Below are positions 5,700 through 32,699 of a stretch of 64,000 bases of DNA, piece by piece. Within the stretch, counting starts at the first letter, position 1, and the number at the start of each line of letters is the position of its first letter. Both the position numbers and the translations under genes were made by a program. The DNA lies in the IMG/VR virus record IMGVR_UViG_3300044846_005229, positions 124,001 through 188,000 of that record; one strand, given 5' to 3'. The notes under the pieces are model-generated. The model had not been told where the DNA came from. It searched no databases and worked only from the letters and a program-made list of their open reading frames with translations.

Positions 5700-5927
5700 C
5701 TACCAGTCACCTTCTCTCAAACAACGGACTATAACCGAACCGGGTCCCGCGAGTTCTAACGCAGTAGTAATTGCGTGAGTTGAGTTGTGGGCCATTATGT
5801 TGTGGATGTGCTGTCGGGTTAATGAGTAAGTTGAGTTTAAAGTTATTTCGGTTAGGACACGATAAGGGCGAAGTTTGCCAGGTGGTGTTGTGCTTCGGGT
5901 AGGTTTGCGGTTCGGTGAGTTGACCAT
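5700..5927 (-). CDS. small hypothetical protein, start uncertain
   Basis: C-terminus IMAHNSTHAITTALELAG...RCLREGDW looks coding; N-terminus overlaps repeats. Confidence 0.45.
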   Translation of the reverse strand: MVNSPNRKPTRSTTPPGKLRPYRVLTEITLNSTYSLTRQHIHNIMAHNSTHAITTALELAGPGSVIVRCLREGDW

Positions 5928-6078
5928 CGGGTGTGATGTTACAAAACTTAACATATCAGGGCGGGGAGTTTTACCATAATGAGTTAACTATCGGGTGGCA
6001 AGGAGTTTACCACGGGGGTAGTACACTTGTACTAGCTTACCCGGTGGCAATACCCGGTGGCAATACCCGGTGGCTAAC

Positions 6079-6282
6079 TCACTTGGAGCGGCGGCGCCTC
6101 AGCTCATCCCCGTAGGTGCAAGCCTCATCGCTATAGCGGCCCTCAGCAATCGGGTTCCAGCCACGCATGGCAGCCTCGGCCTGGCGACAATCTCTGGCTG
6201 CATAGGACAGCTCGGCATCGGTCATGCTGCTGGCTTTGGTGGCCCAGGCGGTGAAATCAGCGGCGGTAGCGGCGGTGGTCAT
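6079..6282 (-). CDS. cassette gene, conserved cyanophage small protein
   Basis: Own promoter at 6308; WNP..EG.YSDE..TYGDELRRR. Confidence 0.75.
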   Translation of the reverse strand: MTTAATAADFTAWATKASSMTDAELSYAARDCRQAEAAMRGWNPIAEGRYSDEACTYGDELRRRRSK

Positions 6283-6761
6283 GGTGCCCCTTGCTTGGTA
6301 CCTACATATTGTAGCACCCTGGCGGGGGCAATGTGGCCCTTGGTTCCTGGACTCGGGAAATCGTTACGGTTCGTCACATTGCCGCAGAAGTCGAAACCAT
6401 GGGAAAGCCCCGGAAACCGGGGCGGTGGAGTCATGCCAGGCGGATCAGCAAGTGGCAATCCATGCAGCCGCCTCGGCTTCGGTAAGGGGGCCAGCGATGC
6501 AGGTGCTGTCAACCTCAAAGCAGGAACGACGCTGCCACTCGTAGCCGAACCATGCGCCATCTTCCTGACGGATTGAGAAGCCGTAGCCGTTGCGGTCAAC
6601 TCGGCGGGTGGTGGCGGCGGTGGTCATGGTGCCCCTTGCTTGGTACCTACATATTGTAGCACCCTGGCGGGGGCAATGTGGCCCTTGGTTCCTGGACTCG
6701 GGAAATCGTTACGGTTCGTCACATTGCCGCAGAAGTCGAAACCATGGGAAAGCCCCGGAAA
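6269..6761 (+). repeat. 148-bp perfect direct repeat (6269-6416 and 6614-6761) containing a whole promoter module
   Basis: Base-by-base identity read from the sequence. Confidence 0.9.
6445..6627 (-). CDS. cassette gene, hypothetical
   Basis: Own promoter at 6653 (duplicated module). Confidence 0.7.
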   Translation of the reverse strand: MTTAATTRRVDRNGYGFSIRQEDGAWFGYEWQRRSCFEVDSTCIAGPLTEAEAAAWIATC

Positions 6762-6938
6762 TCACCAGCGGGCGGCCCAGACCTTAAGCTCAGCCAGGCT
6801 GTAGGTTGCCATGCAGCCAGCGAGGGTGCCATTCTCGACCCGGTGGACCCGGTACTGACCGAACCGGCGAGTAACCCTGACATCCGGGTGACTTGCGAAA
6901 AAATCTAGGATTTGATTGCTAGTGCTCAGGGTGGCCAT
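6762..6938 (-). CDS. cassette gene, 58-aa hypothetical
   Basis: MATLSTSNQILDFFASHPDVRVTRRFGQYRVHRVENGTLAGCMATYSLAELKVWAARW; promoter at 6965; below ORF-track cutoff. Confidence 0.65.
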   Translation of the reverse strand: MATLSTSNQILDFFASHPDVRVTRRFGQYRVHRVENGTLAGCMATYSLAELKVWAARW

Positions 6939-7207
6939 TTGCCGTTTGGTTGGTTGGCTTCGTAATTATAGCATGGTTGCCGGGGGTGCCGACGGGTTTG
7001 CCGGGGTTTTGTTACGTTTAGTAATAATGCCATGGGAGTAATACAAACGTATTAGCTCACCCGGTGAGGTTGCGCTTCGGGTGAGTTGTAACAAAACTTA
7101 ATAATCCGGTGAGTTTATTATCCGGTGGCGACACAAAACTTAACACATTGGGGCAGGGAGTTTAACGGCAATGAGTTAAGGGACCTAGTAGCAAGAACCT
7201 AGATAGC

Positions 7208-7230
7208 AAAAAGCCCCGGCGAACCGGGGC
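7208..7230 (-). terminator. rho-independent terminator, UUCG loop
   Basis: GCCCCGG-TTCG-CCGGGGC-TTTTT just after stop at 7243; near-copies at 10689-10712 and 14014-14037. Confidence 0.85.
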
Positions 7231-7242
7231 AGGGCCAGATAC

Positions 7243-7428
7243 TCAGCGGCGGTAGCAAAGTTCCCGGTGGAGTGCATTGGACCTTGCGATGCAGCCCCCA
7301 AGGCTCTCGGGGCGGATCCTGGCTTCGATGCCAAGGCGACGGATGGCCCGGTGGATTTCAGGGTCCGTCATCAGGGTGGCCTCTTTCTGCCAAGCGGTGA
7401 GATCAGCGATGGTAGCGACGGCGGGCAT
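7243..7428 (-). CDS. cassette gene, weak paralog of 6079-6282
   Basis: AT.AD.TAW...A..MTD.E shared N-terminus; own promoter at 7455. Confidence 0.65.
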   Translation of the reverse strand: MPAVATIADLTAWQKEATLMTDPEIHRAIRRLGIEARIRPESLGGCIARSNALHRELCYRR

Positions 7429-8028
7429 GGTGCGTTCCGGTGCGGTACTTACATATTATATGCCAGGGATGGATGGGTGTCAAGGCGCCGGTCGGTGAGT
7501 TTACGCCCTGTAACAATGCCGGTCGGCGAGTTTACGCTCCGGGTGTCGCGCTTCGGGTGAGTTGACTATCAGGTGGCGACACAAAACTTAACATATCAGG
7601 GCAGGGAGTTTGGCGGCAATGAGTTTACTGTCAGGTGGCGACACAAAACTTAACACACCCTGGCAAGGAGTAATACACTTGTACTAGCTTGCCCGGTGTT
7701 GCTCTCCGGTGTTGCTCTCCGATGAGTTGACTATCGGTGAGTTGACTACCGGGTGCGATGTTACAAAACTTTACATATCAGGGCAGGGAGTAATACACTT
7801 GTACTATCTCACCCGGCGGCAGTTTGACCGCAATGAGTTTACCGCGAGAGTAATACACTTGTACTATCTCACCCGGTGACAATACCCGATGGCAATACCC
7901 GATGCCAATGAGTTCGACCGCAATGAGTTTACCACGGGAGTAATGCTCTTGTACTATCTTCCCCAGTGGCAATACCCATGAAAAAACCCCGGCAAGGCCA
8001 GGGCAAGGTGGGAATTGGGCCGGAACCC

Positions 8029-8265: not shown

Positions 8266-8338
8266 GGGTGACTCCCGGTTGGTGACTCTGTAATTGTACC
8301 ATACGGCAGGCAGGGGGCGCAAGCCCCCCTTGGGCCAC

Positions 8339-8797: not shown

Positions 8798-8870
8798 TGC
8801 GGTTCGGTGGGTGACTCCCGGTTGGTGACTCTGAGATTATAGCACGGATAGGCAGGGGGCGCAAGCCCCC

Positions 8871-9086: not shown

Positions 9087-9160
9087 GGGTGGTTGCCCTT
9101 GGTTGGTTGACTCTGTGATTATAGCATGGTTCCGGGGCAGTGTCAACCCCCTAGGAACCC

Positions 9161-9625: not shown

Positions 9626-10039
9626 GGGTGGCGTTTCGCTTGGGACCCCTTAATTGTAAGCCATGGGTGGCCGGGTGTCAAGGTGCTGGCGGTTTTGTTT
9701 GCATTTCGTAATAATGCCAGTGGGAGTAATACAAACGTACTAGCTCACCCGGTGAGTTTGCGCTTCGGGTGTCGCGGTCCGGTGAGTTTGCCGGTCGGTG
9801 AGTTTGCGGTCCGGTGAGTTTACGCTTCGAGTGTGATGTTACAAAACTTAACACATCGGGGCAGGGAGTTTGACGGCAATGAGTTAGCCGCCCGGTGTCA
9901 ACACAAAACTTAACATTCCGGTAGCAATTTGACGGCAATGAGTTAGCTATTGGGTGTCAACACACCATGGCAGGGAGCATGTGAAACCAGCATAAAGAAA
10001 GGCCGCCGATTGGCAGCCCTTTACTATGCGGACTTTCGT

Positions 10040-10429: not shown

Positions 10430-10732
10430 GGTGCGTTCCGGTTGACTCTGTAATTATAGCATGGGGCGGGAGCCTGCTGTGGGTTTCCGGGAGTTTTGTT
10501 TGCATTCCGTAATAATGCCGGGTCGGTGAGTTTACGCTTCGGTAAGTTGACTATCGGGTGCGATGTTACAAAACTTAACATTCCGGTGGCAGTTTGCGGT
10601 TCGGGTGTGATGTTACAAAACTTAACACATCATGGCAGGGAGTTTGACGGCAGGGAGTTAAACCTTGAACAGCAAAAATACCGACTACAAAAAGGTCCCG
10701 GCGAACCGGGACGGGTGGGGGGGCCAAGGCCA

Positions 10733-10963: not shown

Positions 10964-11297
10964 TTGCCTTTCGGTGCGGGACCCCCTAATTGTAGCACAC
11001 TGCGGGGGCCTGCTGTGGGGTGCCGGTGGTTGTCGGTAGTTTTGTTTGCGTTTTGTTACCATTGGGAATTAGCCGCCAGGAGTAATACACTTGTACTAGC
11101 TCACCCGGTGGTATAATCCCGCAGGCACTTTACGCTTCGGGTTAGTTGTAACAAAACTTAATAATCCGGTGAGTTAACTACCGGGTGCCAACACAAAACT
11201 TAACACATCGTGGCAGGGAGTTTGACCGTAATGAGTTAAACCCCCAAACAGCAAGCCCCAGCAAAGCCAGGGCAGTAGCAACAACCTGATGCAACCC

Positions 11298-11504: not shown

Positions 11505-11888
11505 TTGCCGTTTGGTGCGGTTGACTCTGTAATTGTAGCATATGGCCGGGGGTGCTGGGTGGTGCCGGTAGGTGCCGGGGGGTTTTGTTTACGTTTGGTT
11601 GCCATTGGGGGTTAGCCGCCAGGAGTAATACACTTGTACTAGCTCACCCGGTGAGTTTACGCTTCGGGTGTGATGTTACAAAACTTAACAATCCGGTGGC
11701 AGCTTCACGGCAATGAGTTAGCTATCCGGTGTCAACACAAAACTTAACATTTCTGGGGTAGCTTCACGGCAATGAGTTAGCTATCCGGTGTCAACACAAA
11801 ACTTAACACATCAAGGCAGGGAGTTTGACGACAAAGAGTTATCGCACCGGCCAGCAAAAAGCCCCCGGATGATGGAGGCAGTATGGGC

Positions 11889-12179
11889 TCAATCAACGAT
11901 AGCTGACCACTCGTTGGCATCAATGCCAGGGTGGACGTGTGCCTCGTAAAGACGGGTGCCGTCAGTGAGCTGGGCGACACAGAGGTAGTGATCTGTTTGG
12001 GCCATGCAACCAGCAATGTGGAGAACCGCGCCGGTTGCGGCGTGGCGAAAATCGGCAAGGTCGCTGATATAAGTGGTGCCGATGACAGCAGATTGCTTGC
12101 GCATGTACGGGGTGCTGGCACGCTCGGCAGCCTGCTCGGCGATGGTCAGAACCTCTTCGTCGGTGAGGGTGGTGGCCAT
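11889..12179 (-). CDS. cassette gene, hypothetical
   Basis: Start MATTLTDEE; promoter at 12208. Confidence 0.7.
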   Translation of the reverse strand: MATTLTDEEVLTIAEQAAERASTPYMRKQSAVIGTTYISDLADFRHAATGAVLHIAGCMAQTDHYLCVAQLTDGTRLYEAHVHPGIDANEWSAIVD

Positions 12180-13360: not shown

Positions 13361-13501
13361 CGTTGCGGTGTCGGTTGGGGACCTCGTAATTATAGCACAG
13401 GGGGCCAGAGAACACAATCCCTAACCCCTCGTGACGGCAGGCAGGGGGCCAACACAGTGTCAACCCCATGGCATTGTCAACCCTTGGGCATTGTCAACCC
13501 C

Positions 13502-13741: not shown

Positions 13742-14064
13742 TTGCCGGGGGGGTGCGTTACCTCGTAATTATAGCACAGGGCCGAGGGTGCTGGGGGGTT
13801 GCCGGTAGGTGCCGGTGGTTTTGTTTACATCTGGTAACATTGCCGGTCAATGAGTTTGCAGTTCGGTGAGTTAACTATCGGGTGTGATGTTACATAACTT
13901 AACATACTGGGGCAGGGAGTTTAACGGCAATGAGTTTACTGCCAGGTGGCGACACAAAACTTAACACATCAAGGCAGGGAGTTTGACGACAAAGAGTTAT
14001 TGCACCGGCCAACAAAAAAAACCCCGGCGAACCGGGGCAGGGGCAGGGCAGTATCGGGGGGGTA

Positions 14065-14277: not shown

Positions 14278-14419
14278 TGCCGTTTGGTGCGGTACCCTGA
14301 AATTATAGCATGGTGCAGGGGCAATTGCGGGGTGCCGTTTGATGACGTTTGGTAACAATGCCGTTTGAGTAGTAGGTTTGTACTAGCTTGCCCGTGGTTT
14401 GTTTGCGGTCCGGGTGTGA

Positions 14420-14660
14420 TGTTACAAAACTTAACATTCCGATGGCAGTTTGTGAGTCTGTATTAACTACCCGGTGGCAACACAAAACTTAACATTCCGA
14501 TGGCAGTTTGTGAGTCTGTATTAACTACCCGGTGGCAACACAAAACTTAACATTCCGATGGCAGTTTGACGGCAAGGAGTTTACCATCAGGTGCCAACAC
14601 AAAACTTAACATTCCGATGGCAGTTTGACGGCAAGGAGTTTACCATCAGGTGGCAACACC
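14420..14660 (+). repeat. tandem amplification of the HLR1-like spacer unit (two 59-bp and two shorter copies)
   Basis: acaaaacttaacattccgatggcagtttg repeated four times. Confidence 0.9.
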
Positions 14661-14717
14661 ACGGCAAGGAGTAATACACTTGCACAAGTGTGTCCGGTGG
14701 TAATACCAGGTGTCAAT

Positions 14718-14793
14718 ATGGGGACTGTGGGGATCGAACCCAAACCTCCGCCGATTTATGAGATCGGAGCATTCACCAGATTGCTAAGCCCCC
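14718..14793 (-). tRNA. tRNA-Met/Ile2 (anticodon CAT), possibly degenerate
   Basis: Anticodon arm CCGAT-CTCATAA-ATCGG, GGTTCGATCC T-loop; G1 mismatch, weak T-stem, no CCA. Confidence 0.7.
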
Positions 14794-14822: not shown

Positions 14823-14938
14823 TGTTGCGCTTCGTGATGATAGGCACGGCATGTTGCGCTTCGTGATGATGGGCATGGCATGTTGCGCTTCGTGGCGATA
14901 GGCACGGCATGTTGCGCTTCGTGATGGTAGGCATGGTG
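14823..14938 (+). repeat. 4 x 29-bp tandem repeat resembling the -10/leader module
   Basis: tgttgcgcttcgtgatgataggcacggca and variants at 14823, 14852, 14881, 14910. Confidence 0.85.
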
Positions 14939-14957
14939 CTGTTACGTTCTGCAACAT

Positions 14958-15497: not shown

Positions 15498-16094
15498 TTT
15501 TTTCTCCGGGGTGTCTGTCTATTGTAGCATAGTGCTGGGGGGTTGGGGTTTGCGGGTCGGGTGCCTCGGGATGGATGCCAGGGGTTGGATTCCAGGGGTT
15601 GGATTCCAGGGGTATCGTTGACTCCTAGGGGTGAGGTGGACAGTTTGTTAAGTGTCCATCTGACCTAAAGGAGTATCGTGCCAGGGAGTTTGGTGCCCAA
15701 GGGTTAGTGCCAGTATTAGACTTTGGGTGCGTTTTATGAGTAATGTGGAACCTCAGGGTGCTTTTTGCGAGTAATGTGGAACGCCCCAAAATAAAAATCG
15801 AAAATTCAATCCTTGAGATCGACTGCAGCGGAACGGAGTTACTCCTAAAAAAATTAAAAATTTTAGGACCTAGTTGAAATCCATCCAAAAAATTCTACAT
15901 TTGAATGCATATTATGCACCCTACTACTATAATCGCATATAAATTATTTAATAGAGTGTACTTATGTTAGTTGTACAATCAATAAGTTTTTCTTATTCTT
16001 AGGTACAATCAATGAGTTAAGGGCCAGAAGACAAAAAAAAAGGGGGGATAACCCTAAGGCAATCCCCCATTCTTTGTACTAAGTTTATCGCCAA

Positions 16095-16433: not shown

Positions 16434-16511
16434 GGGGCGCTCCGGTGGGTGACCCTGTAATTATAGCACGAAAGGGAAGGGGGCGCAAGCCCCCCAACCC
16501 CCGGCCATCAC

Positions 16512-16808: not shown

Positions 16809-16895
16809 TGCGGTTCGGGGTGGTTGCCGTTGGTTGACTCTGTAATTGTACCATACAGCAGGCAGGGGGGCGCAAGCCCCCAACCACTCAAGGCA

Positions 16896-17228
16896 TCAAA
16901 TGGCCAGGGCTCGGACGCCTATGATCTTGCCTTCCCCGTCTCTCACTACGTTCTGGGGGCCAGTATCTGGGCGGTAAAGATCGGTCCGGTTGGGGGCTGC
17001 CTGTTGAACCAACATAGAAACAACAAAAATAGTACCCTCTTCGGGATCAGGGAGATTCTCTACATCCCCAAAAGTAGTCCGGGTGACGGGGATTCCATTA
17101 ATTTTGAATACCTCTTCTGTTACTGAAGATACCCGTGCCGCAGGAGCGGTTGGGGCAATAGTAAAGACTTCTCCGTTCTCCTTGTACAGATGAAGGGGGT
17201 GGGGGGTGAGGTTGATGATGGTGGCCAT
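16896..17228 (-). CDS. cassette gene, conserved viral NLTPH-motif protein
   Basis: IINLTPH...LPDPEEGTIFVVS...VRD.EGKIIG pattern recalled from diverse viruses. Confidence 0.75.
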   Translation of the reverse strand: MATIINLTPHPLHLYKENGEVFTIAPTAPAARVSSVTEEVFKINGIPVTRTTFGDVENLPDPEEGTIFVVSMLVQQAAPNRTDLYRPDTGPQNVVRDGEGKIIGVRALAI

Positions 17229-17560: not shown

Positions 17561-17628
17561 GGTGCGGTCTCGGTGGGTGACTCTGTAATTATAGCACGAA
17601 AGGGAAGGGGGCGCAAGCCCCCCACAAG

Positions 17629-17808
17629 TTAGAATCTGATGACGGGATGGCCGGGGTCAAGAGTGTCACATGCTTCAGTTGTGAAAACCAACTTAACTTT
17701 CTGGCCAAAATGCTCATCAATTCCCTCGTCATAAACTGTAACGTTAGAGTCTAGTTGTTCATCGGTGAATTGTTGCAGTTGCTGAAGCAGTTCCCGGTAG
17801 GTAATCAT
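17629..17808 (-). CDS. conserved cyanophage small protein (59 aa)
   Basis: MITYRELLQQLQQFTDEQLDSNVTVYDEGIDEH...TLDPGHPVIRF, hand-translated. Confidence 0.7.
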   Translation of the reverse strand: MITYRELLQQLQQFTDEQLDSNVTVYDEGIDEHFGQKVKLVFTTEACDTLDPGHPVIRF

Positions 17809-18256: not shown

Positions 18257-19183
18257 TGTTGCCGGTGGTTGGTTGGCTCCGTAATTATAGCACATTGCCT
18301 CGGGGGTTGGGGCCCCGGATTGCTGACTCCCAAGGTGTGGTGGACAGTTTGTAAACTGTCTATTTGACTTCGTGAGTTTGACTTTTAGGGTTTGATTCTG
18401 GGGTGTGTTTTCGGGGTCAATGTGGAATCTCAGAGTGCTTTTTGCAGGTAATGTAGAATGCCTAATTTGAAAAGTCTGAAAGTCAACCGCTGAGATCGAC
18501 TGCAGGGCAACGGAGTTACTCCTAAAAAAATTAAAAATTTTAGGACCTAGTGAAAAACGATCCAAAAAATTCTACATTTGAATGCATATTCTGCACCCTA
18601 GGGTCTTTATATACACTTTTTCGCGAATATATGTATAATAAGTGTTTATTCTATGTTGTTATAGTTTGTTGTTGATGAGTCCAAGTAATAAACAACTGGG
18701 ATACGGTCTCAACAGTCTCAGTTAAGTATCGGAATGATGTCACACTTCAAGAGTAAGCAGATGGGTGCGTTTTTCCAGTAATGTAGAAACCCGGGGTGCA
18801 TTTTGCCGGTAATGTAGAATGCCCCAAATTAAAAACCTGAAATTCAATCCCTGAGATCGACTGCAGGGGAACGGAGTTACTCCTAAAATTTTTGAATTTT
18901 TTAGGACCTAATGGAAAACCATCCAAAAAATTCTACATTTGAATGCAAATTCTGCACCCTACTACTATATACTCGCGTAAAAATTATTTAATAGAAGACT
19001 CTTATCTTAATGTCTAGACAGATAAGTAATTCTTATCAATCTAATCCCCCATCAAACCGCAATGTTGTGGGCTATTCGAGGATGCTAACCGGAGTCTCAC
19101 CAAATAGCAAAGGGGCCGATGCCTAAGCACCAACCCCCAAACATTAAACTAAGGTCAATCTAAGGCCAAACCAAAGTCCGAAT

Positions 19184-19946: not shown

Positions 19947-20177
19947 TCACCAGTTCATAGCAATTTCCTGGGCAGTTGCCCCGAAAAAGTATAACACCAA
20001 CTCTCTGCGACCGCGAATATTCAGGTTCAAGATGGTGCAAGCCCGATTAAGCTCATCGCCGTCGGCCTGAACTTCCTCCACTTCGCTAGGGGCCAGGGTC
20101 CTGAGGGAAGAACTCAGGTGGGAGTCTCCGATGTAACCCGATATGCGACGGCCGGTGTTAAGGGTGACGTGAATCAT
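19947..20177 (-). CDS. cassette gene, paralog of 21031-21264
   Basis: MIHVTLNTGRRISGYIGD vs MIYVTLSTGHRISGYIGD. Confidence 0.75.
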   Translation of the reverse strand: MIHVTLNTGRRISGYIGDSHLSSSLRTLAPSEVEEVQADGDELNRACTILNLNIRGRRELVLYFFGATAQEIAMNW

Positions 20178-20265
20178 TGGGGTCCGGGGTGGTTGCCCTT
20201 GGTTGGTTGACTCTGTAAGTGTAGCATAGGGCCGACACGGTGTCAACCCCCCCCCCCTTGGGCTT

Positions 20266-20568
20266 TCAGCGACACTGACTTAGCGGTGTAGGATCAAAGT
20301 GAATATCCCGCTCGATGCGGAGCCCAGCTGGTCCCCGAGTAGCTTCTAGGTCATTCAGGTTGAAGTACCCAAGTTCTCGTGCCTGGCCGATAACCAACCC
20401 AAAGCATTGACCCGTCGCAGGGTCCATCTCGGTGAGGTACCATGTCCAATTGCCCCAGGGCGTGAAAAATTTGGCATAGGCGGTAGCCTCCATGCCTTTG
20501 CCGTCTTGTGCGTACAGGGCTGGGACCTTGGTGGCGATTGCCATGGTTAGTAGCTTGGTGTTGGCCAT
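20266..20568 (-). CDS. DUF2958 family protein
   Basis: KFFTPWGNWTWYLTEMDP...FGLV...ELGYFNL. Confidence 0.8.
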   Translation of the reverse strand: MANTKLLTMAIATKVPALYAQDGKGMEATAYAKFFTPWGNWTWYLTEMDPATGQCFGLVIGQARELGYFNLNDLEATRGPAGLRIERDIHFDPTPLSQCR

Positions 20569-20731
20569 GGTTGCCCTTGGTTGGTTGACTCAGGTATTAT
20601 AGCACGGATGGGGATGGTGCCGTTACGATCTGAAACAACAGGCATGGACCACAGGCAGGCAGGCCCCCGCCCGACAAGTTGACTTCGGTATTATAGCACA
20701 GGCAGGCAGGGGGCGCAAGCCCCCCCACAGG

Positions 20732-20917
20732 CTAGATATCAGAAGGGGGATTCTCAGTCAGCTCGAAGCTATAGGCCCCAGTGTCGTTATTGCCGTGGCT
20801 GGAAGTATACCCTTCCCTAACAAGACGCAGCGCTTCCTCTAGGGCAATTTCGATGTCATCCAGGGTTTGACCGCTGGCAGTCAATTTCAGGACAAACGGG
20901 GCGTTAAGATCGTTCAT
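20732..20917 (-). CDS. cassette gene, hypothetical
   Basis: Start MNDLNAPF; promoter at 20946. Confidence 0.7.
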   Translation of the reverse strand: MNDLNAPFVLKLTASGQTLDDIEIALEEALRLVREGYTSSHGNNDTGAYSFELTENPPSDI

Positions 20918-21030
20918 GGCGGTTCGGTGGTTGGTGACAGGGCAATCATAGCACAGGCAGGCATGGAACGCAAGCCCCTTGCCCTCCGAGCAAACAATCA
21001 AACTGGCAAGTTCCCAGTTAGCTCCGACCC

Positions 21031-21264
21031 CTAAACATCTCCACCCCAATTCATAACAATTTCCTGGGCGTTTGCCCCGAAAAAGCGGAACACACGGGTA
21101 TGAACCTTACGGTTCAATATAGTGCAACAACCGAATAATTCAACACCGTCTGCCTGAACTTCCACTACTTCACTAGGATTCAGGGATTTAAGTTCTGATA
21201 TCAGGCGGGGGTCCCCGATGTAACCAGATATGCGATGGCCGGTGCTAAGGGTGACGTAGATCAT
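21031..21264 (-). CDS. cassette gene, paralog of 19947-20177
   Basis: Shared EVQADG.EL...C.IL...FFGA.AQEI.MNW. Confidence 0.75.
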   Translation of the reverse strand: MIYVTLSTGHRISGYIGDPRLISELKSLNPSEVVEVQADGVELFGCCTILNRKVHTRVFRFFGANAQEIVMNWGGDV

Positions 21265-21642: not shown

Positions 21643-22149
21643 TTTTCTAAGGAAGCGAATGGGCCGGGTTTGGTCCCGATGCACTAATCATAGCACATTG
21701 CCACGGGGTTGGGGCCTTGGGTAGGGGCCTTGGGGTTGTTGACTCCTGGGGTGTGGTGGTTGCTGTGGGGTTGCTGTGGGGGTTGAGTATCTGGGGTTGT
21801 TGACTCCCAAGGTGTGGTGGACAGTTTGTAAACTGTCTATTTGCGTTGGGAGTTTGGTACCGAGGGTGTGTTTTCGGAGTTAATGTGGAACCTCAGGGTG
21901 CATTTTCCGGGTAATGTAGAATGCCCCAAATTGAAAACCTGAAATTCAATCCCTGAGATCCATTGCGGGGGAACGGAGTTACTCCTAAAAAAATTAAAAA
22001 TTTTAGGACCTAGTGAAAAACGATTCAAAAAATTCTACATTTGAATGCAAATTCTGCACCCTGGGGCTCTTTATATACACTTTTTCGCGAATATATGTAT
22101 AATGAGTGTTTACCTTATGTTGTTATAGTTTGTTGTTGATGGGTCCAAG

Positions 22150-22335
22150 TAGTCAACAACTGGGAGTGGTCCCAACAGTCTCAGTTAAGTATCGGAATGA
22201 GTCTACATCGAGTAGTTTACAGTTGGTATTAGTCCCAACAGTCTCAGTTAAGTATCGGAATGAGACCCAACCGAACAGTCAACAACTGGAATACGGTCTC
22301 AACAGTCTCGTTTCAGTCCCATAATGAGACCACAC
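22150..22335 (+). repeat. ~63-bp tandem units with GTCTCA-N14-TGAGAC hairpin (also ~18690-18745 and 25650-25880)
   Basis: cagtctcagttaagtatcggaatga recurs between paired 200-bp elements. Confidence 0.85.
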
Positions 22336-22795
22336 CTCAGGGTAAATATGGCAGGTATTTTCGGAGTTAATGTGGAACCTTGGGGTGCGTTTTGTGAGTA
22401 ATGTGGAATGTTGAGTGCAGTTTTCGGAGTAATGTGGAAACCACAAAATCAAAAAACCAAAATCCATTCCTTGAAATCGACTGCAGGGCAACGGAGTTAC
22501 TCCTAAAATTTTTGAATTTTTTAGGACCTAATGAAAAAACGATCCAAAAGTTCCACATTTGAATGCAAATTCTGCACCCTACTACTATATACTCGCGTAA
22601 AAATTATTTATAGTACACCCTTATCTAAATATCCATAATCAATAAGTTACCCTTATCTATGTACCAACCAATGAGTAATAGCGGTAAAGCAACAAAAAAA
22701 GGAGGGTCACCTTTCGGCAGCCCCCATATCAGTAAGTATTTATATTTACTGGGTGAAATTAGACCCCGGAACCAACAACCCCGGCAGCCCGACCT

Positions 22796-25202: not shown

Positions 25203-26264
25203 CGTTGCGGTGTCGGTTGGTTGGCTTCGTAATTATAGCACATGGACGGGTCTGGATGCGGTTCGGCATGTTGGTGCGGTTCGGCATGTTGACTCCTGGG
25301 GTGTGGTGGACAGTTTGTAAACTGTCTATTTGCGTTGGGGGTTTGACTTTAGGGGCTTGATTCCAGGGTGTATTTTAGGGGTTAATGTATAATCCGGGGT
25401 GCGTTTTCCGGGTAATGTAGAATGCCTAATTTGAAAAGTCCGAAAGTCAACCGCTGAGATCGATTGCAGGGCAACGAGTTTACTCCTAAAATTTTTGAAT
25501 TTTTTAGGACCTAGCGAAAAACCATCCAAAAAATTCTACATTTGAATGCATATTTTGCACCCTGGGGTCTTTATATACACTTTTTCGCGAATATATGTAT
25601 AATAAGTGTTTACCTTATGTTGTTGGTGAGTTGAATAGTTGACGACTGGGTGTGATCTCGTCAGTCTCAGTTAAGTATCGGAATGAGTTCACATCGAGTA
25701 GTCTACAGTTGGCATCAGCCCCAACGGTCTCAGTTAAGTATCGGAATGAGACTCCACCAAATAGTAAACAACTGGGGTACGGTCTCAACAGTCTCGTTTC
25801 AGTCCCACAACAAGACTCATCCAAATAGTAAACAACTGGGGTACGGTCTCAACAGTCTCACTTCAATCTCACAATGAGATCACACTTCAAGAGTAAGCAG
25901 ATGGGTGCGTTTTTCCAGTAATGTAGAAACCCAGGGTGCATTTCCCAAGTAATGCAGAAACCCTAAAATCAAAAACCCGAAACTCAATCCCTGAGATCGA
26001 CTGCAGCGGAACGGAGTTACTCCTAAAAAAATTAAAAATTTTAGGACCTTTTCAAAAACAGCATGAAAAATTCTACATTTGAATGCATATTTTGCACCCT
26101 ACTACTATATACTCGCGTAAAAATTATTTATAGTACACTCTTATCTAAATATCCATAATCAATAAGTTATCCTTATCTATGTACCAACCAATGAGTAATA
26201 GCAGTAAGGCAACAAAAGAAAGGGGGGAATCACCCTAAGGCAATCCCTCCCCTAAAAACAGCAC

Positions 26265-26518: not shown

Positions 26519-26950
26519 TTACCCGTACCACCCATACTGGCGAACCCTCTCCAAATAGGTCTCCCAAACCGACGGATCCATGGCACCTGCCGTTGTCTTA
26601 AAGTGATGGGAGAAAAACGTAATGGCAAGCTCCATATTGCGCCTACCAACAGGATTAGCAGAATGAATGACCACAGCCGGTGGAATAAACCCACCATCAA
26701 AACCATTCTCATACACAATTTGCTCAATCCACTTGCAAACATCCATGCCAGTTCCCCTAGCGTCATCCCCGAGATCATGATCCAAGGATACAACTTCGAC
26801 ATTGCCAGTCTTCAGCAATTCGATAACCTCATCAGGCCAATAGCAACGGACCCACCCATCAGGGGTAGGCCTGATATCATCGAGAAATACTTTCATTGCC
26901 TTGGGTTTAGGTAGACTGTGGGCGTGGTTGCCATTGGGGGTGGTTGCCAT
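26519..26950 (-). CDS. cyclic-phosphate-processing receiver-domain protein
   Basis: KVFLDDIR, SLDHDLG, GTGMDV..W, IHSANPVG motifs. Confidence 0.8.
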   Translation of the reverse strand: MATTPNGNHAHSLPKPKAMKVFLDDIRPTPDGWVRCYWPDEVIELLKTGNVEVVSLDHDLGDDARGTGMDVCKWIEQIVYENGFDGGFIPPAVVIHSANPVGRRNMELAITFFSHHFKTTAGAMDPSVWETYLERVRQYGWYG

Positions 26951-27445: not shown

Positions 27446-27811
27446 TCAATCCTTAGCGGTAATCTCAGCACCTTCCAGTAGTTTGGAAGCTAGGTCAGTA
27501 TCACCCGCCTTAATTGCGTTTTGGATGCGTTCTTTCAAGGTTAGCTCGTATGACCATTTTCGGCCGTTGATGGTGCCCCTGACATTGCCCCCGACAGAGC
27601 CCTCGACAGAGCCCCCGACAGAGCCCCCGACAGAGCCCCTGACATTGCCCCCGACAGAGCCCCTGACATTGCCCCCGACAGAGCCTAGGACATCACCCAA
27701 GACACCACCCCTGACATTGCCCCCGACAGAGCCCTCGACATCATTTACCCGCCATTCACCGCTGATTCTGGTGAAAGTAACTAGTTTTTTAATTTCTTCA
27801 ATGCTTGGCAT
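27446..27811 (-). CDS. repeat protein (GSVGGNVR repeats, beta-solenoid-like)
   Basis: 12/24-bp tandem coding repeats at 27575-27740. Confidence 0.7.
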   Translation of the reverse strand: MPSIEEIKKLVTFTRISGEWRVNDVEGSVGGNVRGGVLGDVLGSVGGNVRGSVGGNVRGSVGGSVGGSVEGSVGGNVRGTINGRKWSYELTLKERIQNAIKAGDTDLASKLLEGAEITAKD

Positions 27812-28002
27812 TTCAATTTAGGGGTTTGATGATGTCATGGTGTGTCCGGTGGTTGGTGACAAAGGAATTATAGCATGGGTCCGGCAGACAGTCAACCCTT
27901 AGGGACCTGGGGCCACACCCCAAACAGCAAAAAAAAGGGGGGGGCCGATGCCAACGGCACCAACCCCCCCCCCAAGCAATCGGCCGATACCGACGGCTCC
28001 AA

Positions 28003-29252: not shown

Positions 29253-29726
29253 TCATGCCGCAGCAAACTGCTTATTCCGGGAATAGAAACGCTCACAGCC
29301 ATACTTGACCGCAATTTCATCCAAACTACCCGGATTGGAGCGGCTCCGGCCCAGCCCTGCAGGCTTCCAGAACCAGCATTTCCGGCCACTATGCCAGCGG
29401 CACCCCAGAGCCTTAAGGTCTTCCTTAACGGGCTTGGTATCACCCGTGACCCATACCCATAGGCCAATCAGGCTGATATCAAGGTTGGGAATCTTAAGCA
29501 ATTCCGCAATCTGATCCATGATGGCCTGCTCGGTTTTTTCCGTATAGCGGTAGGTCCGGCCATCGTCCTCTTGACCGTTGCAGGCTGCCAGGGCCTCGTG
29601 GTAGGCGGCATTAAGGGCCTTCATGGTTTCCAGATCGCCACCAAGATCAGGGTGGTGCTTGCGAGCCAGATCACGGTAAGCGCTTTTGACTTGCTCAACA
29701 GTGGTGAGGCCAGTGAAGAATGTCAT
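29253..29726 (-). CDS. J-domain (DnaJ-like) protein
   Basis: VKSAYRDLARKHHPDLGGDLETMKALNAAY with intact HPD. Confidence 0.9.
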   Translation of the reverse strand: MTFFTGLTTVEQVKSAYRDLARKHHPDLGGDLETMKALNAAYHEALAACNGQEDDGRTYRYTEKTEQAIMDQIAELLKIPNLDISLIGLWVWVTGDTKPVKEDLKALGCRWHSGRKCWFWKPAGLGRSRSNPGSLDEIAVKYGCERFYSRNKQFAAA

Positions 29727-30064: not shown

Positions 30065-30426
30065 AATTAAAGAGTTTATGCCATTGAGTTTATGCCATGG
30101 TGCATTTTGCGAGTAATGTAGAAGTCTAGGGTGTGTTTTCGGAGTTAATGTAGAATGCCAAGGGTGCTTTTTCTGGGTAATGTGGAAACCCCCAAATTGA
30201 AAATCGAAAATTCATTCCCTGAGATCCGTTGCAGGGCAACGGAGTTACTCCTAAAATTTTTGAATTTTTTAGGACCTAATGAAAAAACGATCCAAAAGTT
30301 CCACATTTGAATGCAAATTCTGCACCCTACTATCATATATTCGCGAAAAGTATATTTAATAGAAGACTCTTATGTATAGTTCCATAACCAATAAGAAATC
30401 CTTATCACTGCACCCTCCATTCAAAG

Positions 30427-30648: not shown

Positions 30649-30800
30649 TGTGAGGTCGGTGGGTTTCGGTTGGTATGGGCCTAGTTTAGCATGGTTGCCG
30701 TGGGAGCGTCAACCCCCTAGCTTCAAGGATTGGCAAGCATGGGGCCGGGAGTGCGTCAACCTATCGGCAACAACTCCACGGCCCCCAGCCCTGACAGCAA

Positions 30801-31184
30801 TCAGCGCCGGTACAAATATCCCCCAGCCCAATCAGCCCGCTGATAGCAACTCTCAGGGTCCTCCAACAAATTGTAACGAATTCCTTTGGCAGGAGACTTC
30901 CAATTGGCTGCCTTGTAAACGTCCCCGGTTACCCGATCGATGAAAGCATGAATAGAACGATTGCCGGACGTTGACATTATGATTTTCAGATACTTGCGCC
31001 CTTCCTCCACTGAGAATATCGGGGCATAACCCTTGCCAACCCCATCAGGATTAAACCGCGCCGAGCTATCAGCCAGAACCGCGCATAGCTTGAGGGTGGC
31101 GGTGAGAACCGGGCTAGGTGCCTTAGGGGTGGTAACCTCAGGGGCGGTAGCTTCGGGATTCGTGGCCAGTTCGGTAGCAATCAT
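30801..31184 (-). CDS. conserved cyanomyovirus protein
   Basis: KYLKI...SIHAFID..TGDVYKAANWKSPAKGIRYNL...ADWAGGYLY. Confidence 0.8.
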   Translation of the reverse strand: MIATELATNPEATAPEVTTPKAPSPVLTATLKLCAVLADSSARFNPDGVGKGYAPIFSVEEGRKYLKIIMSTSGNRSIHAFIDRVTGDVYKAANWKSPAKGIRYNLLEDPESCYQRADWAGGYLYRR

Positions 31185-31792
31185 GGCGGGTCGGGAACGG
31201 CGGTGTTTGGTTCCTTGCCATTTTACACCATTGGAACCCGGATCGTCAAGGGGCCACCAGGGGAATTGCCGAGGTATTGTCAAGGCATCGTCAAGGGGCC
31301 ATCAGGGTCCGCTAAGGAAGCCATGCGACCAAAAAACACACAAAGTCAAGGGACCCCACCGAGCCGAGGCTCAGAAACCCAGTCACTGTCAGGGATTTTC
31401 CCTTACTGTGGTTGTCTTCATTTGAGAATGCCCTAGGTGGGTGTTCCTAATTGTTGTTACCAAAGTTTCAAACCTGAAAAATTGAAAAATTTGAATTTAT
31501 TATATTTTTCTATTATACCAACACACTATAATGTCATAATGCCATAACAGTATAACACTATCGTTATATGAGCATAAAGTCATTTTGATCTTGGGGGGCA
31601 CCTTGACACTACATATCATGGCACCGTCTCACAGTAACTTCATTGCGCTAACACTATGCCATCATAACACTATCGTTATACGATTATAGAGTCATTAACC
31701 CTGGGGACTAAAGCGTGTCTGGGGGGCATAGGAGTAATGTGGCGCGGTAAGTTGCCAGTGGGCGATGATTATGGTATAGGCAGACCCGGCAA

Positions 31793-32101
31793 TCAGGCGG
31801 ATACCTCTTGTTTGGTTAGCCAGGCTTCTACGGCAGCCAGCGCCGACGGGGGGACCATGCGATGGCCGACGGGCTGCCATGAGTGACTGGCCCATCCGCC
31901 GGCAGGCTGCTCATGCCATTCAGTCAACCTGCGGAACATATAGAAAACCGCTGTTTCATTAAGCGACAGTAAATCAGGAAAATACTGATACTCTACCCGA
32001 AAAAGGAGATACCAAGAAAAAGCGTTTCTGGGCCAGGCTTGGACGGTCAAGCCGCTGGCGGGGTCAGTGTAGACGGTTGTAACGGCAAGGGTGTTGGTCA
32101 T
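31793..32101 (-). CDS. hypothetical protein
   Basis: 102-aa ORF. Confidence 0.6.
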   Translation of the reverse strand: MTNTLAVTTVYTDPASGLTVQAWPRNAFSWYLLFRVEYQYFPDLLSLNETAVFYMFRRLTEWHEQPAGGWASHSWQPVGHRMVPPSALAAVEAWLTKQEVSA

Positions 32102-32134
32102 TGGTGGTTGGCTGCAGGGAAAGAAAGGCCAAAG

Positions 32135-32311
32135 TTAAGAATTGAAGTAGTCATATTCGTAATCACCTAAATCTAAATCCTCCAAGAATTGTTTAAAAAA
32201 CTCTTCTTCGGTTAGTGGCATCACACTTTCTGGCAGCGTGGCATACGGGTTAGTTGGCCAGCTATTAAGGAGCCGATCTCTAAGCGCATGGTTGACTTTG
32301 CGTTTGCCCAT
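32135..32311 (-). CDS. hypothetical protein
   Basis: Start MGKRK after promoter near 32346. Confidence 0.55.
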   Translation of the reverse strand: MGKRKVNHALRDRLLNSWPTNPYATLPESVMPLTEEEFFKQFLEDLDLGDYEYDYFNS

Positions 32312-32402
32312 GGGGATTGCGGTTTGTGGAATCTGACTCCCATAGTCTAGCACACATGGGCCAAACTGACCCGTACTCAGTCCGATGCCAATTCATGCCA
32401 AT

Positions 32403-32603
32403 TCATGCCAATTCACAAACCGACACACAGTAACCCACACTCTCCACCCTCTCACAAACCATCCTAGCGCATTGCCTCTCAGCCTTCTCCTTAGATGTCG
32501 AAACATACATAACGGAAGCCCACGCATCGGGGTAACTCCCGTAAGCAACTACACTGTAGGTTAAGGTAGGGGCTTCATAGGCAAGAATTGAATCAGGATT
32601 CAT
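32403..32603 (-). CDS. hypothetical protein
   Basis: Promoter at 32633. Confidence 0.6.
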   Translation of the reverse strand: MNPDSILAYEAPTLTYSVVAYGSYPDAWASVMYVSTSKEKAERQCARMVCERVESVGYCVSVCELA

Positions 32604-32699
32604 TGGTTGTGCCGTGGTTGCTGACTTTCATAGTATAGCACACGGGAGACCGAACCGAACCGAACCCCCCCTATGCCAGTTGCTTAATTGTCCTTAAAT

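What the first reader, a model, noticed from the sequence alone, without database searches (positions are those of the whole stretch)
5880..32650. 27-kb array of about 55 self-contained promoter-gene-hairpin cassettes
Seen: nearly every small minus-strand ORF has its own extended -10 (TGNTATAAT/TACAAT), often a -35 at 17 bp, a stereotyped leader (ACAGAGTCAACCAACC or ACAGAGTCACCAACCGGGAGTCACCC) and a downstream hairpin. The ORFs are mostly unrelated while the flanks are near-identical. Known: early host-takeover regions with strong host-type promoters exist in T4, T5 and SPO1, but are far smaller. Inference: a modular platform in which cargo genes are swapped by recombination between homologous promoter modules, with no integrase seen in the window. 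So many consensus promoters may also draw host sigma70 RNA polymerase away from host genes.
Basis: partly seen in the sequence, partly recalled or inferred. Interest (0 to 1): 0.85.

Follow-up and report, generated by a model that had tools for sequence, protein, structure and literature searches.

The report
Swappable promoter-gene cassettes in giant phage
A 27-kb stretch of an uncultured 279-kb phage, probably of a freshwater cyanobacterium, holds about 51 tiny genes that each have their own host-type promoter and usually a terminator hairpin; related phages have gained, lost, replaced and moved these genes one cassette at a time, the pattern already described for "PeSL" cassettes of T4-like phages.

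Summary
Between 6079 and 32603 there are 51 small minus-strand genes (44-157 aa, median 78) and a tRNA.
- **Promoters:** 45 of 51 genes have a TGn-extended -10 located 23-73 nt before the ATG. TGCTAYAAT occurs 40 times, always on the minus strand, against 0.84 expected.
- **Hairpins:** 33 of 51 genes are followed by a strong hairpin.
- **Cargo:** the proteins are almost all unrelated to each other.

The flanks are similar families, not near-identical. A true -35 is present in a minority. Comparable systems of this size are already known.

The region is a hyperplastic, probably early, accessory-gene region built from composite terminator/promoter modules. It matches the PeSL cassettes of T4-like phages, here in a non-T4-looking jumbo phage with A+C-rich leaders that mostly lack a Shine-Dalgarno motif.

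Relatives at about 90% identity lack 15 of 34 cassettes. Only 1 of 29 homology breaks falls in coding DNA. One cassette sits behind a different promoter at another array position. A Crn4-type ring-nuclease (anti-CRISPR candidate) cassette is a strain-specific insertion flanked by two modules.

Early timing, sigma-70 titration and the recombination mechanism remain untested. I rate it a new variant of a known kind, of moderate interest.

The parts
5880..32650 (-). Whole array: 51 monocistronic small-gene cassettes plus tRNA-Met, orphan promoters and intergenic repeat blocks. G+C is 0.50-0.59, against 0.41-0.49 in the rest of the window.
8266..8330 (-). Example of a hairpin-type module. The G/C hairpin (core 8314-8327) carries a -35-like TTGCGC in its loop. 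It is followed by TGGTACAAT, the leader TACAGAGTCACC... and the ATG at 8265.
9087..9146 (-). Example of a full sigma-70-type module: TTGACA, 17 nt, TGCTATAAT, then an A+C-rich leader and the ATG at 9086.
16480..16493 (-). One of six identical hairpin cores GGGGCTTGCGCCCC. The others are at 8314-8327, 8856-8869, 16867-16880, 17608-17621 and 20710-20723. They act as the terminator of one cassette and the -35 region of the next, and they are candidate crossover sites.
   Evidence: (6 found, 0.01 expected)
16896..17228 (-). 110-aa cassette that is a Crn4b-type ring-nuclease homologue (candidate anti-type III CRISPR / anti-cyclic-oligoadenylate enzyme). It was seen only in this strain among the sampled relatives and is flanked by two homologous modules.
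17629..17808 (-). 59-aa cassette that lies at a different array position, behind a different promoter, in relatives L196 and L179. The junctions are in the leader and just after the hairpin.
29253..29726 (-). 157-aa cargo with an N-terminal J domain (HPD motif). The Pfam hit is below the gathering score.
26519..26950 (-). 143-aa cargo with a cREC_REC (cyclic-phosphate processing receiver) domain. It is preceded by two tandem promoters at 26990 and 27030.
20266..20568 (-). 100-aa DUF2958 cargo, conserved in strain B.
30801..31184 (-). 127-aa DUF7717 cargo. A 31%-identical paralogue replaces the 96-aa gene (11889-12179) in strain B.
19947..21264 (-). Span holding the only clear paralogue pair of the array (19947-20177 and 21031-21264, 64% aa identity).
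14719..14793 (-). tRNA-Met (CAT) embedded in the array, preceded by a 29-nt tandem repeat at 14823-14933.
6283..6661 (-). 345-nt tandem duplication of the promoter plus its upstream region (promoters at 6316 and 6661). The two copies drive different ORFs. The duplication is absent from strain B.
20600..20698 (-). Orphan promoter module (TGCTATAAT at 20698) with no ORF, just upstream of the next promoter. A second orphan module is at 29846.
18383..18975 (-). Two of eight copies of the A+T-rich ~230-nt 'D1' non-coding element. The others are at 15707-15937, 21846-22077, 22365-22595, 25349-25578, 25885-26115 and 30111-30343. Each lies between a terminator and the next promoter.
11678..11808 (-). 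58-59-nt tandem repeats (GTTAAGTTTTGT type) that fill the long upstream regions of about 10 promoters between 5900 and 14700. They were the crossover site of one cassette indel.
27935..27973 (-). Strongest intrinsic-terminator-like hairpin of the array (18 pairs followed by a T run).

Best explanation
The region is the hyperplastic accessory-gene region of an uncultured 279-kb phage whose host is probably a cyanobacterium. Each small gene is a self-contained transcription unit. A composite module ends the previous transcript with a G/C hairpin, which often carries the -35-like TTGCGC in its loop. The module then starts a new transcript from a host sigma-70-type extended -10 promoter (TGCTATAAT). 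An 80% A+C leader that mostly lacks a Shine-Dalgarno motif follows, and the ORF usually opens Met-Ala-Thr-Thr.

By analogy with T4, T5 and SPO1, these promoters would be read by unmodified host RNA polymerase early in infection. They would deliver many small host-takeover and counter-defence proteins, one of which is a Crn4-type ring nuclease.

The modules recur every ~0.5 kb in one orientation. They therefore also act as portable homology for recombination, which deletes, inserts, replaces or moves single cassettes. Related phages thus share a collinear backbone but each carries a different subset of an open pool of cargo genes. This is the PeSL (promoter-early stem-loop) mechanism described for T4-like phages.

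Shown here: the anatomy, the statistics, purifying selection on the ORFs, cassette-wise turnover, and the positions of the junctions. Inferred: early timing, terminator function, homologous recombination as the mechanism, and the functions of the cargo.
For: **Anatomy and statistics:**

**The genes are real.** In 966 orthologous codons, differences by codon position are 63/52/158. The cargo hits 18 PHROG families and 6 Pfam families. JGI gene calls agree with mine.

**It is not a misassembly.** The same gene order appears in at least 6 independent assemblies.

**Cassette turnover.**
- Of 34 window cassettes in the interval covered by strain B (L027), 19 are shared at 80-97% aa identity and 15 are absent. 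The 3.9-kb flank 996-4860 is one block without indels.
- Of 10 cassettes in the interval covered by L014, 4 are absent.
- Across the window and 20 related loci, 224 cassette ORFs fall into 94 families. Of these, 45 are not in the window and 14 are found only in the window.
- The order map shows a collinear backbone with a different subset in each genome.

**Junction positions.**
- Of 29 homology-block ends, 1 lies in coding DNA, which makes up 44% of positions (P = 1e-6).
- Of the 28 non-coding ends, 22 lie in promoter/leader or stop/terminator zones, which make up 50% of non-coding positions (P = 0.0016).
- One indel is a clean leader-to-leader deletion or insertion.
- One gene replacement starts between the -10 and the ATG.
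- The 59-aa cassette is found behind another promoter at another site, flanked by two hairpin copies.
- The Crn4b cassette is flanked by two modules where strain B has a single chimeric module.

**Cargo is independent of the module.** Homologues of the 96-aa protein occur in high-GC phage contigs with a different promoter and leader.

**Literature parallel.** PeSLs combine a sigma-70 consensus promoter with a polyG/polyC stem-loop that may overlap the -35. Their crossovers lie between the -10 and the ATG or in the loop. There are about 52 per genome.

**Host.** The nearest cellular relatives of the phage CysRS are cyanobacterial, at 45-50% identity. The best cultured-phage hits of its DnaN are cyanophages.
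Against: - No expression data exist. 'Early', promoter strength and terminator function all rest on sequence resemblance.
- Homology at some junctions is only 5-12 nt. Microhomology-mediated or illegitimate recombination followed by selection could give the same picture.
- Selection alone would keep breakpoints out of coding DNA.
- Six of 29 block ends lie in other intergenic repeats, so the promoter modules are not the only substrate.
- About a third of cassettes lack a strong hairpin, and the U-tracts are often weak.
- Within one strain the array is stable across samples, so turnover is not rapid.
- Two features of the published PeSL motif are absent: the A+T-rich upstream region and the Shine-Dalgarno box.
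- I did not see the phage's structural genes, so its family is not settled.
Confidence: 0.75

Rival explanations
1. Expression-only modules. The promoter, leader and hairpin sequences resemble each other only because each gene needs strong host-polymerase recognition and insulation from its neighbours. Cassette gain and loss would come from illegitimate or microhomology-mediated recombination at random places. Selection would then remove every event that damages a gene, which leaves junctions at cassette borders.
For: - Junction homology is short in some events, 5-12 nt.
- One indel used unrelated intergenic repeats.
- The exact leader types are few.
- The same promoter+leader core occurs in unrelated phage contigs L002 and L003, as a host-imposed constraint would predict.
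Against: - Among non-coding positions, junctions are still enriched in modules: 22 of 28, against 50% expected (P = 0.0016).
- Inserted cassettes are flanked by direct copies of the module or the hairpin.
- Chimeric modules are seen.
- The conserved part of the module extends into the first codons of otherwise unrelated ORFs.
Confidence: 0.2
2. A site-specific cassette platform, like an integron. A dedicated recombinase encoded elsewhere in the genome would recognise the hairpins or another repeat as its site and move the cassettes.
For: - The hairpin GGGGCTTGCGCCCC recurs in identical form and brackets a moved cassette.
- About 197 kb of the contig was not examined.
Against: - No integrase or other recombinase was found among the ORFs scanned, or among the JGI Pfam annotations, of the 82 kb held.
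- Junctions lie at several different places: leader, -10, hairpin and other repeats.
- Every cassette has its own promoter, and there is no attC-like site.
Confidence: 0.04
3. The main function of the array is to act as a sink for host sigma-70 RNA polymerase. On this view the many consensus promoters matter more than the cargo.
For: - About 55 near-consensus extended -10 promoters lie in 27 kb.
- Orphan promoters without an ORF exist at 20698 and 29846.
Against: - The cargo ORFs are under purifying selection, and many belong to phage protein families.
- At least one cargo is a plausible enzyme with its catalytic residues intact.
- No measurement bears on titration.
Confidence: 0.08
4. The array is an assembly artefact: repeats caused a chimeric metagenome contig.
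For: The region is rich in repeats.
Against: The same order of more than 25 cassettes was recovered in independent assemblies from at least 6 samples and by two assemblers (JGI and Logan). A 12-kb contig from another sample is 100% identical.
Confidence: 0.01

Closest known systems
PeSL (promoter-early stem-loop) cassettes of T4-like myoviruses (phi1/RB49, T4/PST, KVP40/nt-1; Arbiol et al. 2010 PMC2839356; Comeau et al. 2014 PMC4122927)
   Same: - A composite of a sigma-70-consensus promoter and a polyG/polyC stem-loop that may overlap the -35.
- Placed in front of small ORFan genes and clustered in hyperplastic regions.
- Insertions, deletions, replacements and displacements of single ORFs between close relatives.
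- Crossovers between the -10 and the ATG or in the stem-loop.
- Degraded or tandem -35 copies.
- A similar number of motifs per genome (about 52 there, about 55 here).
   Different: - Here nearly all motifs form one contiguous 27-kb unidirectional run rather than several regions.
- The upstream region is G+C-rich, not A+T-rich.
- There is no Shine-Dalgarno box. An 80% A+C leader takes its place, and the conserved part runs into the first codons (Met-Ala-Thr-Thr).
- The phage has a DnaN-type clamp and no close cultured relative, so it does not look T4-like.
- Mini-circles and promoter or terminator activity were shown for PeSLs and are untested here.
Early host-takeover regions of T4, T5 and SPO1 (from general knowledge)
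   Same: Many small genes of unknown function are read from strong host-type promoters, and they are dispensable and variable.
   Different: Those regions are mostly short operons, and in SPO1 and T5 they number a couple of dozen genes. Here almost every gene is monocistronic. Timing is unknown.
Cyanomyovirus hyperplastic region and the S-PM2 'ORFanage' (Puxty et al. 2015, PMC4503421)
   Same: A contiguous block of about 33 ORFans in a cyanophage. It is variable between relatives and dispensable.
   Different: The authors found few PeSL-like motifs there and argued against PeSL-mediated acquisition. Here the motif density is maximal.
Integron cassette arrays
   Same: A unidirectional array of small, unrelated, exchangeable cassettes with a hairpin at each 3' end, and an open cassette pool.
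   Different: No integrase and no attC were found. Each cassette carries its own promoter. Junction positions vary.
Viral Crn4b and AcrIII-1 ring nucleases (Chi et al. 2025, PMC12830947)
   Same: The 110-aa cassette at 16896-17228 aligns over its whole length with Crn4b. The T-x-H motif and the C-terminal Arg are conserved.
   Different: It concerns only one cargo gene, and its activity is untested.

Membership tests
PeSL cassettes | Sigma-70-consensus promoter directly upstream of a small ORF(an) | tested here: met
   45 of 51 cassettes have an extended -10, and 4 more have other sigma-70-like boxes. All 40 TGCTAYAAT hits are on the minus strand, against 0.84 expected. This is sequence-level evidence only.
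PeSL cassettes | Stable stem-loop (often polyG/polyC) next to or overlapping the promoter | tested here: met
   33 of 51 cassettes have a hairpin of -12 kcal/mol or stronger after the stop, against 17% of controls. Six identical G/C hairpins have a loop that supplies the -35-like TTGCGC. About a third of the cassettes lack one.
PeSL cassettes | Concentrated in a hyperplastic region of non-essential ORFans | tested here: met
   There are 6-11 promoters per 4 kb in the array and 0-4 elsewhere in 82 kb. Only 6 of 51 proteins hit Pfam. 15 of 34 cassettes are missing in a ~90%-identical relative.
PeSL cassettes | Indels, replacements and displacements between close relatives, with crossovers inside the motif | tested here: met
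PeSL cassettes | [quoted passage not shown] | tested here: not met
   The upstream consensus is G/C-rich. The leader is 80% A+C. An SD-like core is present in 6 of 50.
PeSL cassettes | Measured promoter and terminator activity; excised mini-circles | not testable with these tools
   This needs reporter assays and inverse PCR on lysates.
PeSL cassettes | Carried by a T4-like myovirus | tested here: inconclusive
   The clamp is DnaN-like, with best hits to non-T4 cyanophages at 26-32%. No megablast or tblastn relatives were found among cultured phages. Structural genes are not in the 82 kb examined.
Integron | IntI-type recombinase next to the array, attC sites, promoterless cassettes read from one Pc | tested here: not met
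   No recombinase was found among the ORFs scanned, or the JGI Pfam annotations, of the 82 kb held. Every cassette has its own promoter. The rest of the genome was not examined.
Crn4 ring nuclease (cassette 16896-17228 only) | Homology to the Crn4 fold, with conserved Thr/His near the N-terminus and Arg near the C-terminus | tested here: met
   PADLOC Unk_01 E = 1.6e-26. PDB 9sma E = 1.6e-9 and 9r7b E = 3.4e-8. NLTPH and the G-x-R-A-L motif are aligned. The catalytic residues are named in PMC12830947.
Crn4 ring nuclease (cassette 16896-17228 only) | Cleavage of cyclic oligoadenylates; relief of type III CRISPR immunity | not testable with these tools
   This needs an enzyme assay and a plasmid or phage challenge.
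Phage early (host-polymerase) gene class | Transcribed in the first minutes of infection by unmodified host RNA polymerase | not testable with these tools
   Only the promoter sequence type is known.

The most novel reading that the evidence does not exclude
The array may be more than a passive PeSL-like region. It may be a dedicated cassette-exchange platform, without an integrase, shared by a whole family of freshwater jumbo phages. On this reading the conserved module (hairpin, extended -10, GTC-ACC leader and the first Met-Ala-Thr codons) is a functional recombination and expression adaptor. The adaptor would let any captured ORF be expressed at once, and the other conserved non-coding parts would be cis-acting control or targeting sites for a phage factor. 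Those parts are the eight ~230-nt D1 elements with inverted and direct ~30-nt units, the 18-bp palindrome and the 58-64-nt tandem hairpin repeats. The array would then be a natural, self-renewing library of counter-defence genes.
Probability: 0.12. Interest if true: 0.85.

Novelty: new variant of a known kind. Interest (0 to 1): 0.55.

Why it matters
- **Breadth of the mechanism.** It extends the PeSL idea, regulatory cassettes that double as recombination sites, from T4-like coliphages and vibriophages to an unrelated-looking giant phage of probable cyanobacterial host. This suggests the mechanism is a general solution in large phages rather than a T4 peculiarity.
- **A place to look for new genes.** The array and its relatives give a compact, pre-parsed catalogue of at least 94 families of small, independently expressed proteins. 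One of them is a Crn4-type ring nuclease. This is a good place to look for new anti-defence and host-takeover functions in cyanobacteria.
- **Possible tools.** The modules are candidate strong, insulated promoter-leader-terminator parts that work without a Shine-Dalgarno sequence.

Tried and rejected
- **Nucleotide similarity to cultured phages.** Megablast of the array and of the flank against 50,697 phage records gave no match.
- **Protein similarity.** tblastn of the 458-aa flank protein gave no match.
- **Rfam.** Searches at gathering threshold and at E up to 1 found only tRNAs.
- **D1 core in bacterial genomes.** The D1 core pattern had no match in 185,579 bacterial genomes.
- **CRISPR mini-array idea.** The 63-64-nt tandem units next to D1 have a 29-nt conserved part and a 34-35-nt variable part, and they contain GGGACTGAAAC. 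I rejected the CRISPR reading because the 'spacers' are related to each other and are duplicated between arrays.
- **D1 as a structured RNA.** RNAalifold on 31 distinct copies gave -8.8 kcal/mol and one covarying pair. I judged it more likely to be DNA-level iterons.
- **First hairpin metric.** It was too lenient: 43 of 51 cassettes against 41 of 50 controls. I replaced it with compact hairpins and 200 controls.
- **L032 as a comparison strain.** It is 100% identical to the window and so is uninformative.
- **PDB sequence searches.** Five further cargo proteins gave nothing.
- **NtcA-site reading of AGTAC-N-GTATTACT.** I dropped this idea because the spacing is N9, not N8, and the site lies about 95 nt upstream. 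This rests on my own knowledge of the NtcA consensus.

Full report
**Source and setting.** The window is bases 124,001-188,000 of IMG/VR contig IMGVR_UViG_3300044846_005229 (279,339 bp), in the same orientation.
- It has no nucleotide-level relative among 50,697 cultured phage records.
- All convincing genes in the window, and in 10 kb beyond each end, lie on the minus strand.
- The flanks encode CysRS, a DnaN-type clamp, thymidylate kinase, RNA ligase, a CCA-adding/polyA-polymerase-type enzyme, a pentapeptide-repeat protein, an SPFH protein, an HNH endonuclease and four tRNAs.
- The nearest cellular relatives of the CysRS are cyanobacterial, at 45-50% identity. One 58% hit is probably a misbinned phage contig.
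- The best cultured-phage hits of the clamp are cyanophages, at 26-32%.
- From this I infer, but do not show, a cyanobacterial host. No structural genes lie in the 82 kb that I could read.

**Observation.** Between 6079 and 32603 I curated 51 protein-coding cassettes (44-157 aa, median 78) and a tRNA-Met. JGI's independent gene calls give the same sizes.
- 45 of 51 genes have a TGn-extended -10 located 23-73 nt upstream of the ATG. Four more have other sigma-70-like boxes. One (32101) appears co-transcribed.
- TGCTAYAAT occurs 40 times, always on the minus strand, against 0.84 expected. The looser pattern gives 68 minus-strand and 4 plus-strand hits.
- Promoter density is 6-11 per 4 kb in the array and 0-4 per 4 kb elsewhere in 82 kb.
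- All 13 matches of the promoter+leader pattern in the whole 279-kb contig lie in the array.
- The module consensus is a G/C-rich upstream part, then TGCTATAAT, then taCagaGTCacCcACC. Leaders are 80% A+C, and only 6 of 50 have an SD-like core.
- The ORFs tend to begin Met-Ala-Thr-Thr: Ala at position 2 in 24 of 51 and Thr at position 3 in 25 of 51.
- A compact hairpin of -12 kcal/mol or stronger follows the stop in 33 of 51 cassettes, against 17% of coding controls. At -16 kcal/mol or stronger the counts are 17 of 51 against 0 of 200.
- Six hairpins share the identical core GGGGCTTGCGCCCC, against 0.01 expected. They sit so that the loop provides a -35-like TTGCGC for the next promoter.
- Only two paralogue pairs exist among the 51 proteins.

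- The exact leaders it quotes are a minority: 4 and 3 exact copies.
- A true TTGAC -35 is present in 9-15 promoters.
- A third of the cassettes have no strong hairpin.

**The genes are real and the region is not an artefact.**
- In 966 codons of orthologue pairs against two relatives, differences by codon position are 63/52/158, which indicates purifying selection.
- Eighteen PHROG families and six Pfam families are hit: DUF7717, cREC_REC, DUF2958, a weak J domain, DUF5710 and SnoaL_2.
- The same cassette order occurs in at least 6 independent assemblies.

**Test of the swapping idea: strain B.** Strain B (L005/L027, JGI 3300043772) is about 90% identical to the window.
- Of the 34 window cassettes in the interval it covers, 19 are shared at 80-97% aa identity and 15 are absent. 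Strain B has about 10 cassettes of its own.
- The adjacent flank 996-4860 is one 3.9-kb block without indels.
- Of 29 homology-block ends, 1 lies in coding DNA, which makes up 44% of positions (P = 1e-6).
- Of the 28 non-coding ends, 22 lie in the promoter/leader or stop/terminator zones, which make up half of the non-coding positions (P = 0.0016).

**Individual events.**
- A 96-aa gene is replaced by a 102-aa DUF7717 gene. Homology ends between the -10 and the ATG and resumes at the terminator.
- A 63-aa cassette is present only in strain B, as a clean leader-to-leader indel.
- A 76-aa cassette is present only in the window, with breaks in the intergenic GTTAAGTTTTGT repeats.
- A 53-aa cassette in the window corresponds to a repeat block in strain B, with breaks at a terminator and at a -10.
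- Around 6100-6950 there is a truncation, a 345-nt tandem duplication and a replacement.
- Strain C (L014) lacks 4 of 10 cassettes and has several new ones.

**Metagenome relatives.** Twenty-seven of them hold at least 2 modules.
- The multi-module loci are related arrays at 70-90% identity.
- Together with the window they give 224 cassette ORFs in 94 families. Of these, 45 are not in the window and 14 are only in the window. Some of the very short ORFs may be spurious.
- The order map shows a collinear backbone with a different subset in each genome.

**Two events that show the mechanism most directly.**
- The 59-aa cassette (17629-17808) lies between the orthologues of the 8500 and 8265 cassettes in L196 and L179. 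Homology to the window copy starts about 12 nt before the ATG and ends just after the hairpin. In L196 the gene is driven by the recipient-site promoter and is bracketed by two hairpin copies.
- The 110-aa cassette (16896-17228) is flanked in the window by two homologous modules. Strain B has a single chimeric module at that place.

**Cargo.** The 110-aa protein is a Crn4b-type ring-nuclease homologue.
- PADLOC Unk_01 matches at 1.6e-26. PDB Crn4a 9sma matches at 1.6e-9 and Crn4b 9r7b at 3.4e-8.
- The NLTPH motif and the C-terminal Arg are aligned with the residues that the Crn4 paper names as catalytic.
- That paper notes phage orthologues as likely anti-CRISPRs.
- The cassette is absent from every sampled relative.

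Other cargo includes a J-domain protein, a cREC receiver-domain protein that is widespread in unrelated phages, DUF2958 and DUF7717. Most cargo is unannotatable. Homologues of the 96-aa protein occur in 53-63% G+C phage contigs behind a different promoter and leader. Cargo and module are therefore separable. The array's raised G+C may reflect imported genes; this is an inference.

**Comparison with what is known.** The anatomy and behaviour match the PeSL cassettes of T4-like phages.
- PeSLs combine a sigma-70-consensus promoter with a polyG/polyC stem-loop that can overlap the -35.
- They sit in front of ORFans in hyperplastic regions.
- Phages phi1 and RB49 carry about 52 each, up to 8 per 5 kb.
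- Their crossovers lie between the -10 and the ATG or in the loop.
- Slipped -35 copies are seen.
- In the paper library that I searched, no paper describes PeSLs outside T4-likes. The S-PM2 'ORFanage' paper argued against PeSLs there.

The differences here are as follows.
- There is one contiguous 27-kb run.
- The upstream part is G/C-rich.
- There is no Shine-Dalgarno box. An A+C leader takes its place, and conservation extends into the first codons.
- The phage looks non-T4.

Integron membership fails: no integrase, no attC, and each cassette has its own promoter.

**Verdict.** Early timing, terminator function, homologous recombination as opposed to selection-filtered illegitimate recombination, and the sigma-70 sink idea all remain untested.

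**Other non-coding content of the array.**
- Eight copies of a ~230-nt A+T-rich element (D1) are built from one inverted and two or three direct ~30-nt units around two palindromes.
- 63-64-nt tandem hairpin units lie next to some D1 copies.
- An 18-bp perfect palindrome lies about 50 nt upstream of four promoters.
- 58-59-nt tandem repeats fill the long upstream regions of about ten promoters.

Noticed in passing
window 15707-15937, 18383-18614, 18745-18975, 21846-22077, 22365-22595, 25349-25578, 25885-26115, 30111-30343 (minus strand): There are eight copies, 77-87% alike, of a ~230-nt A+T-rich non-coding element that I call 'D1'. Each lies between a terminator and the next promoter. The element holds one inverted and 2-3 direct copies of a ~30-nt unit (GGGTGCA..AATGTAGAAT / ATTCTACATTAC..GCACCC). 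These surround the palindromes CCTAAAA-N10-TTTTAGG and GGAGTAACTCC. I found 31 distinct copies across relatives. There is no Rfam hit and only weak RNAalifold support, so it looks like DNA-level iterons or a TIR-bounded element. Copy number differs between strains.
   Followed up: partly
window 22173-22363, 25659-25849, 18710-18773: These are 63-64-nt tandem units with a conserved 29-nt hairpin-forming part (GTCTCA..TGAGAC) and a variable part of 34-35 nt. The geometry resembles a CRISPR array, and one unit contains GGGACTGAAAC. However, the 'spacers' are related to each other, so this is not a CRISPR array. The function is unknown.
   Followed up: partly
window 18610-18639, 22074-22103, 25574-25603 (plus strand): Three conserved plus-strand promoter-like sites (TATACA-18-TATAAT) lie at the junction of tandem D1 copies. 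They point against the direction of all the genes and could drive antisense or non-coding RNAs through the hairpin units.
   Followed up: no
window about 18340-18358, 21826-21844, 25312-25330, and a variant at about 15650-15670 (minus strand): An 18-bp perfect palindrome, GACAGTTTACAAACTGTC, lies about 50 nt upstream of the -10 of the four promoters that follow a D1 element. It looks like an operator for a dimeric regulator.
   Followed up: no
window 5900-6070, 7010-7230, 7510-7990, 9690-9990, 10480-10690, 11010-11260, 11560-11860, 13800-14020, 14330-14720: Long upstream regions of about ten promoters are built from 58-59-nt tandem repeats (GTTAAGTTTTGT hairpin, AAACTCATTGCCG) and a conserved 30-nt box (GAGCTAGTACAAGTGTATTACTCC). 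A shared CGGCACC..CAGCA..CCCC stretch replaces the -35. These repeats were the crossover site of one cassette indel.
   Followed up: partly
window 13458-13501 and 31250-31335 (minus strand): There are two or three tandem copies of the -35 motif GGGTTGACA in front of a single -10. This resembles the 'slipped' degraded PeSLs described for nt-1 and PST.
   Followed up: no
window 27446-27811 (minus strand): A 121-aa cargo is encoded largely by a 12-nt repeat (about 14 copies, Gly-Ser-Val-Gly-Gly-Asn-Val-Arg type). The orthologue in L014 is 218 aa, so the repeat expands and contracts. Its leader holds a 6-codon upstream ORF.
   Followed up: no
window 33226-33555 and 32856-33191 (minus strand): Two adjacent short ORFs look like pieces of an alanyl-tRNA synthetase catalytic domain. 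The first hits Pfam tRNA-synt_2c at 1e-15. The second has no Pfam hit, and I read it as AlaRS-like only by eye from its sequence. This may be a split gene, a minimal gene or a decayed gene, and it lies just upstream of the array.
   Followed up: no
window 4860-5880: About 1 kb at the downstream edge of the array has no convincing ORF; the gene callers disagree on strand. It is 86-90% conserved in strain B. It may be a non-coding RNA or a regulatory region.
   Followed up: no
window 43128-44555, 54920-55669, 58877-59440, 58059-58781, 60096-63376; L033 13625-14257: The flanks carry a full CysRS, a CCA-adding/polyA-polymerase-type enzyme, a zeta-toxin/AAA_33-type kinase, a metallophosphatase, RNA ligase and tRNAs Ser, Ile(TAT) and Arg(TCT). 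This set suggests tRNA supply and repair against host anticodon nucleases.
   Followed up: no
L035 (CALRKZ020000018.1, 56.7 kb, labelled as a Mesorhizobium MAG): This contig carries the closest CysRS (58% identity), well above any cyanobacterial one. It is probably a related phage contig that was binned into a bacterial MAG.
   Followed up: no
L002 286-330, L003 214-240: The same TGCTATAAT-TACAGAGTCAAC promoter and leader core occurs once each in two otherwise unrelated viral contigs of 37-43 kb. The core is therefore either host-imposed or exchanged between phage lineages.
   Followed up: partly
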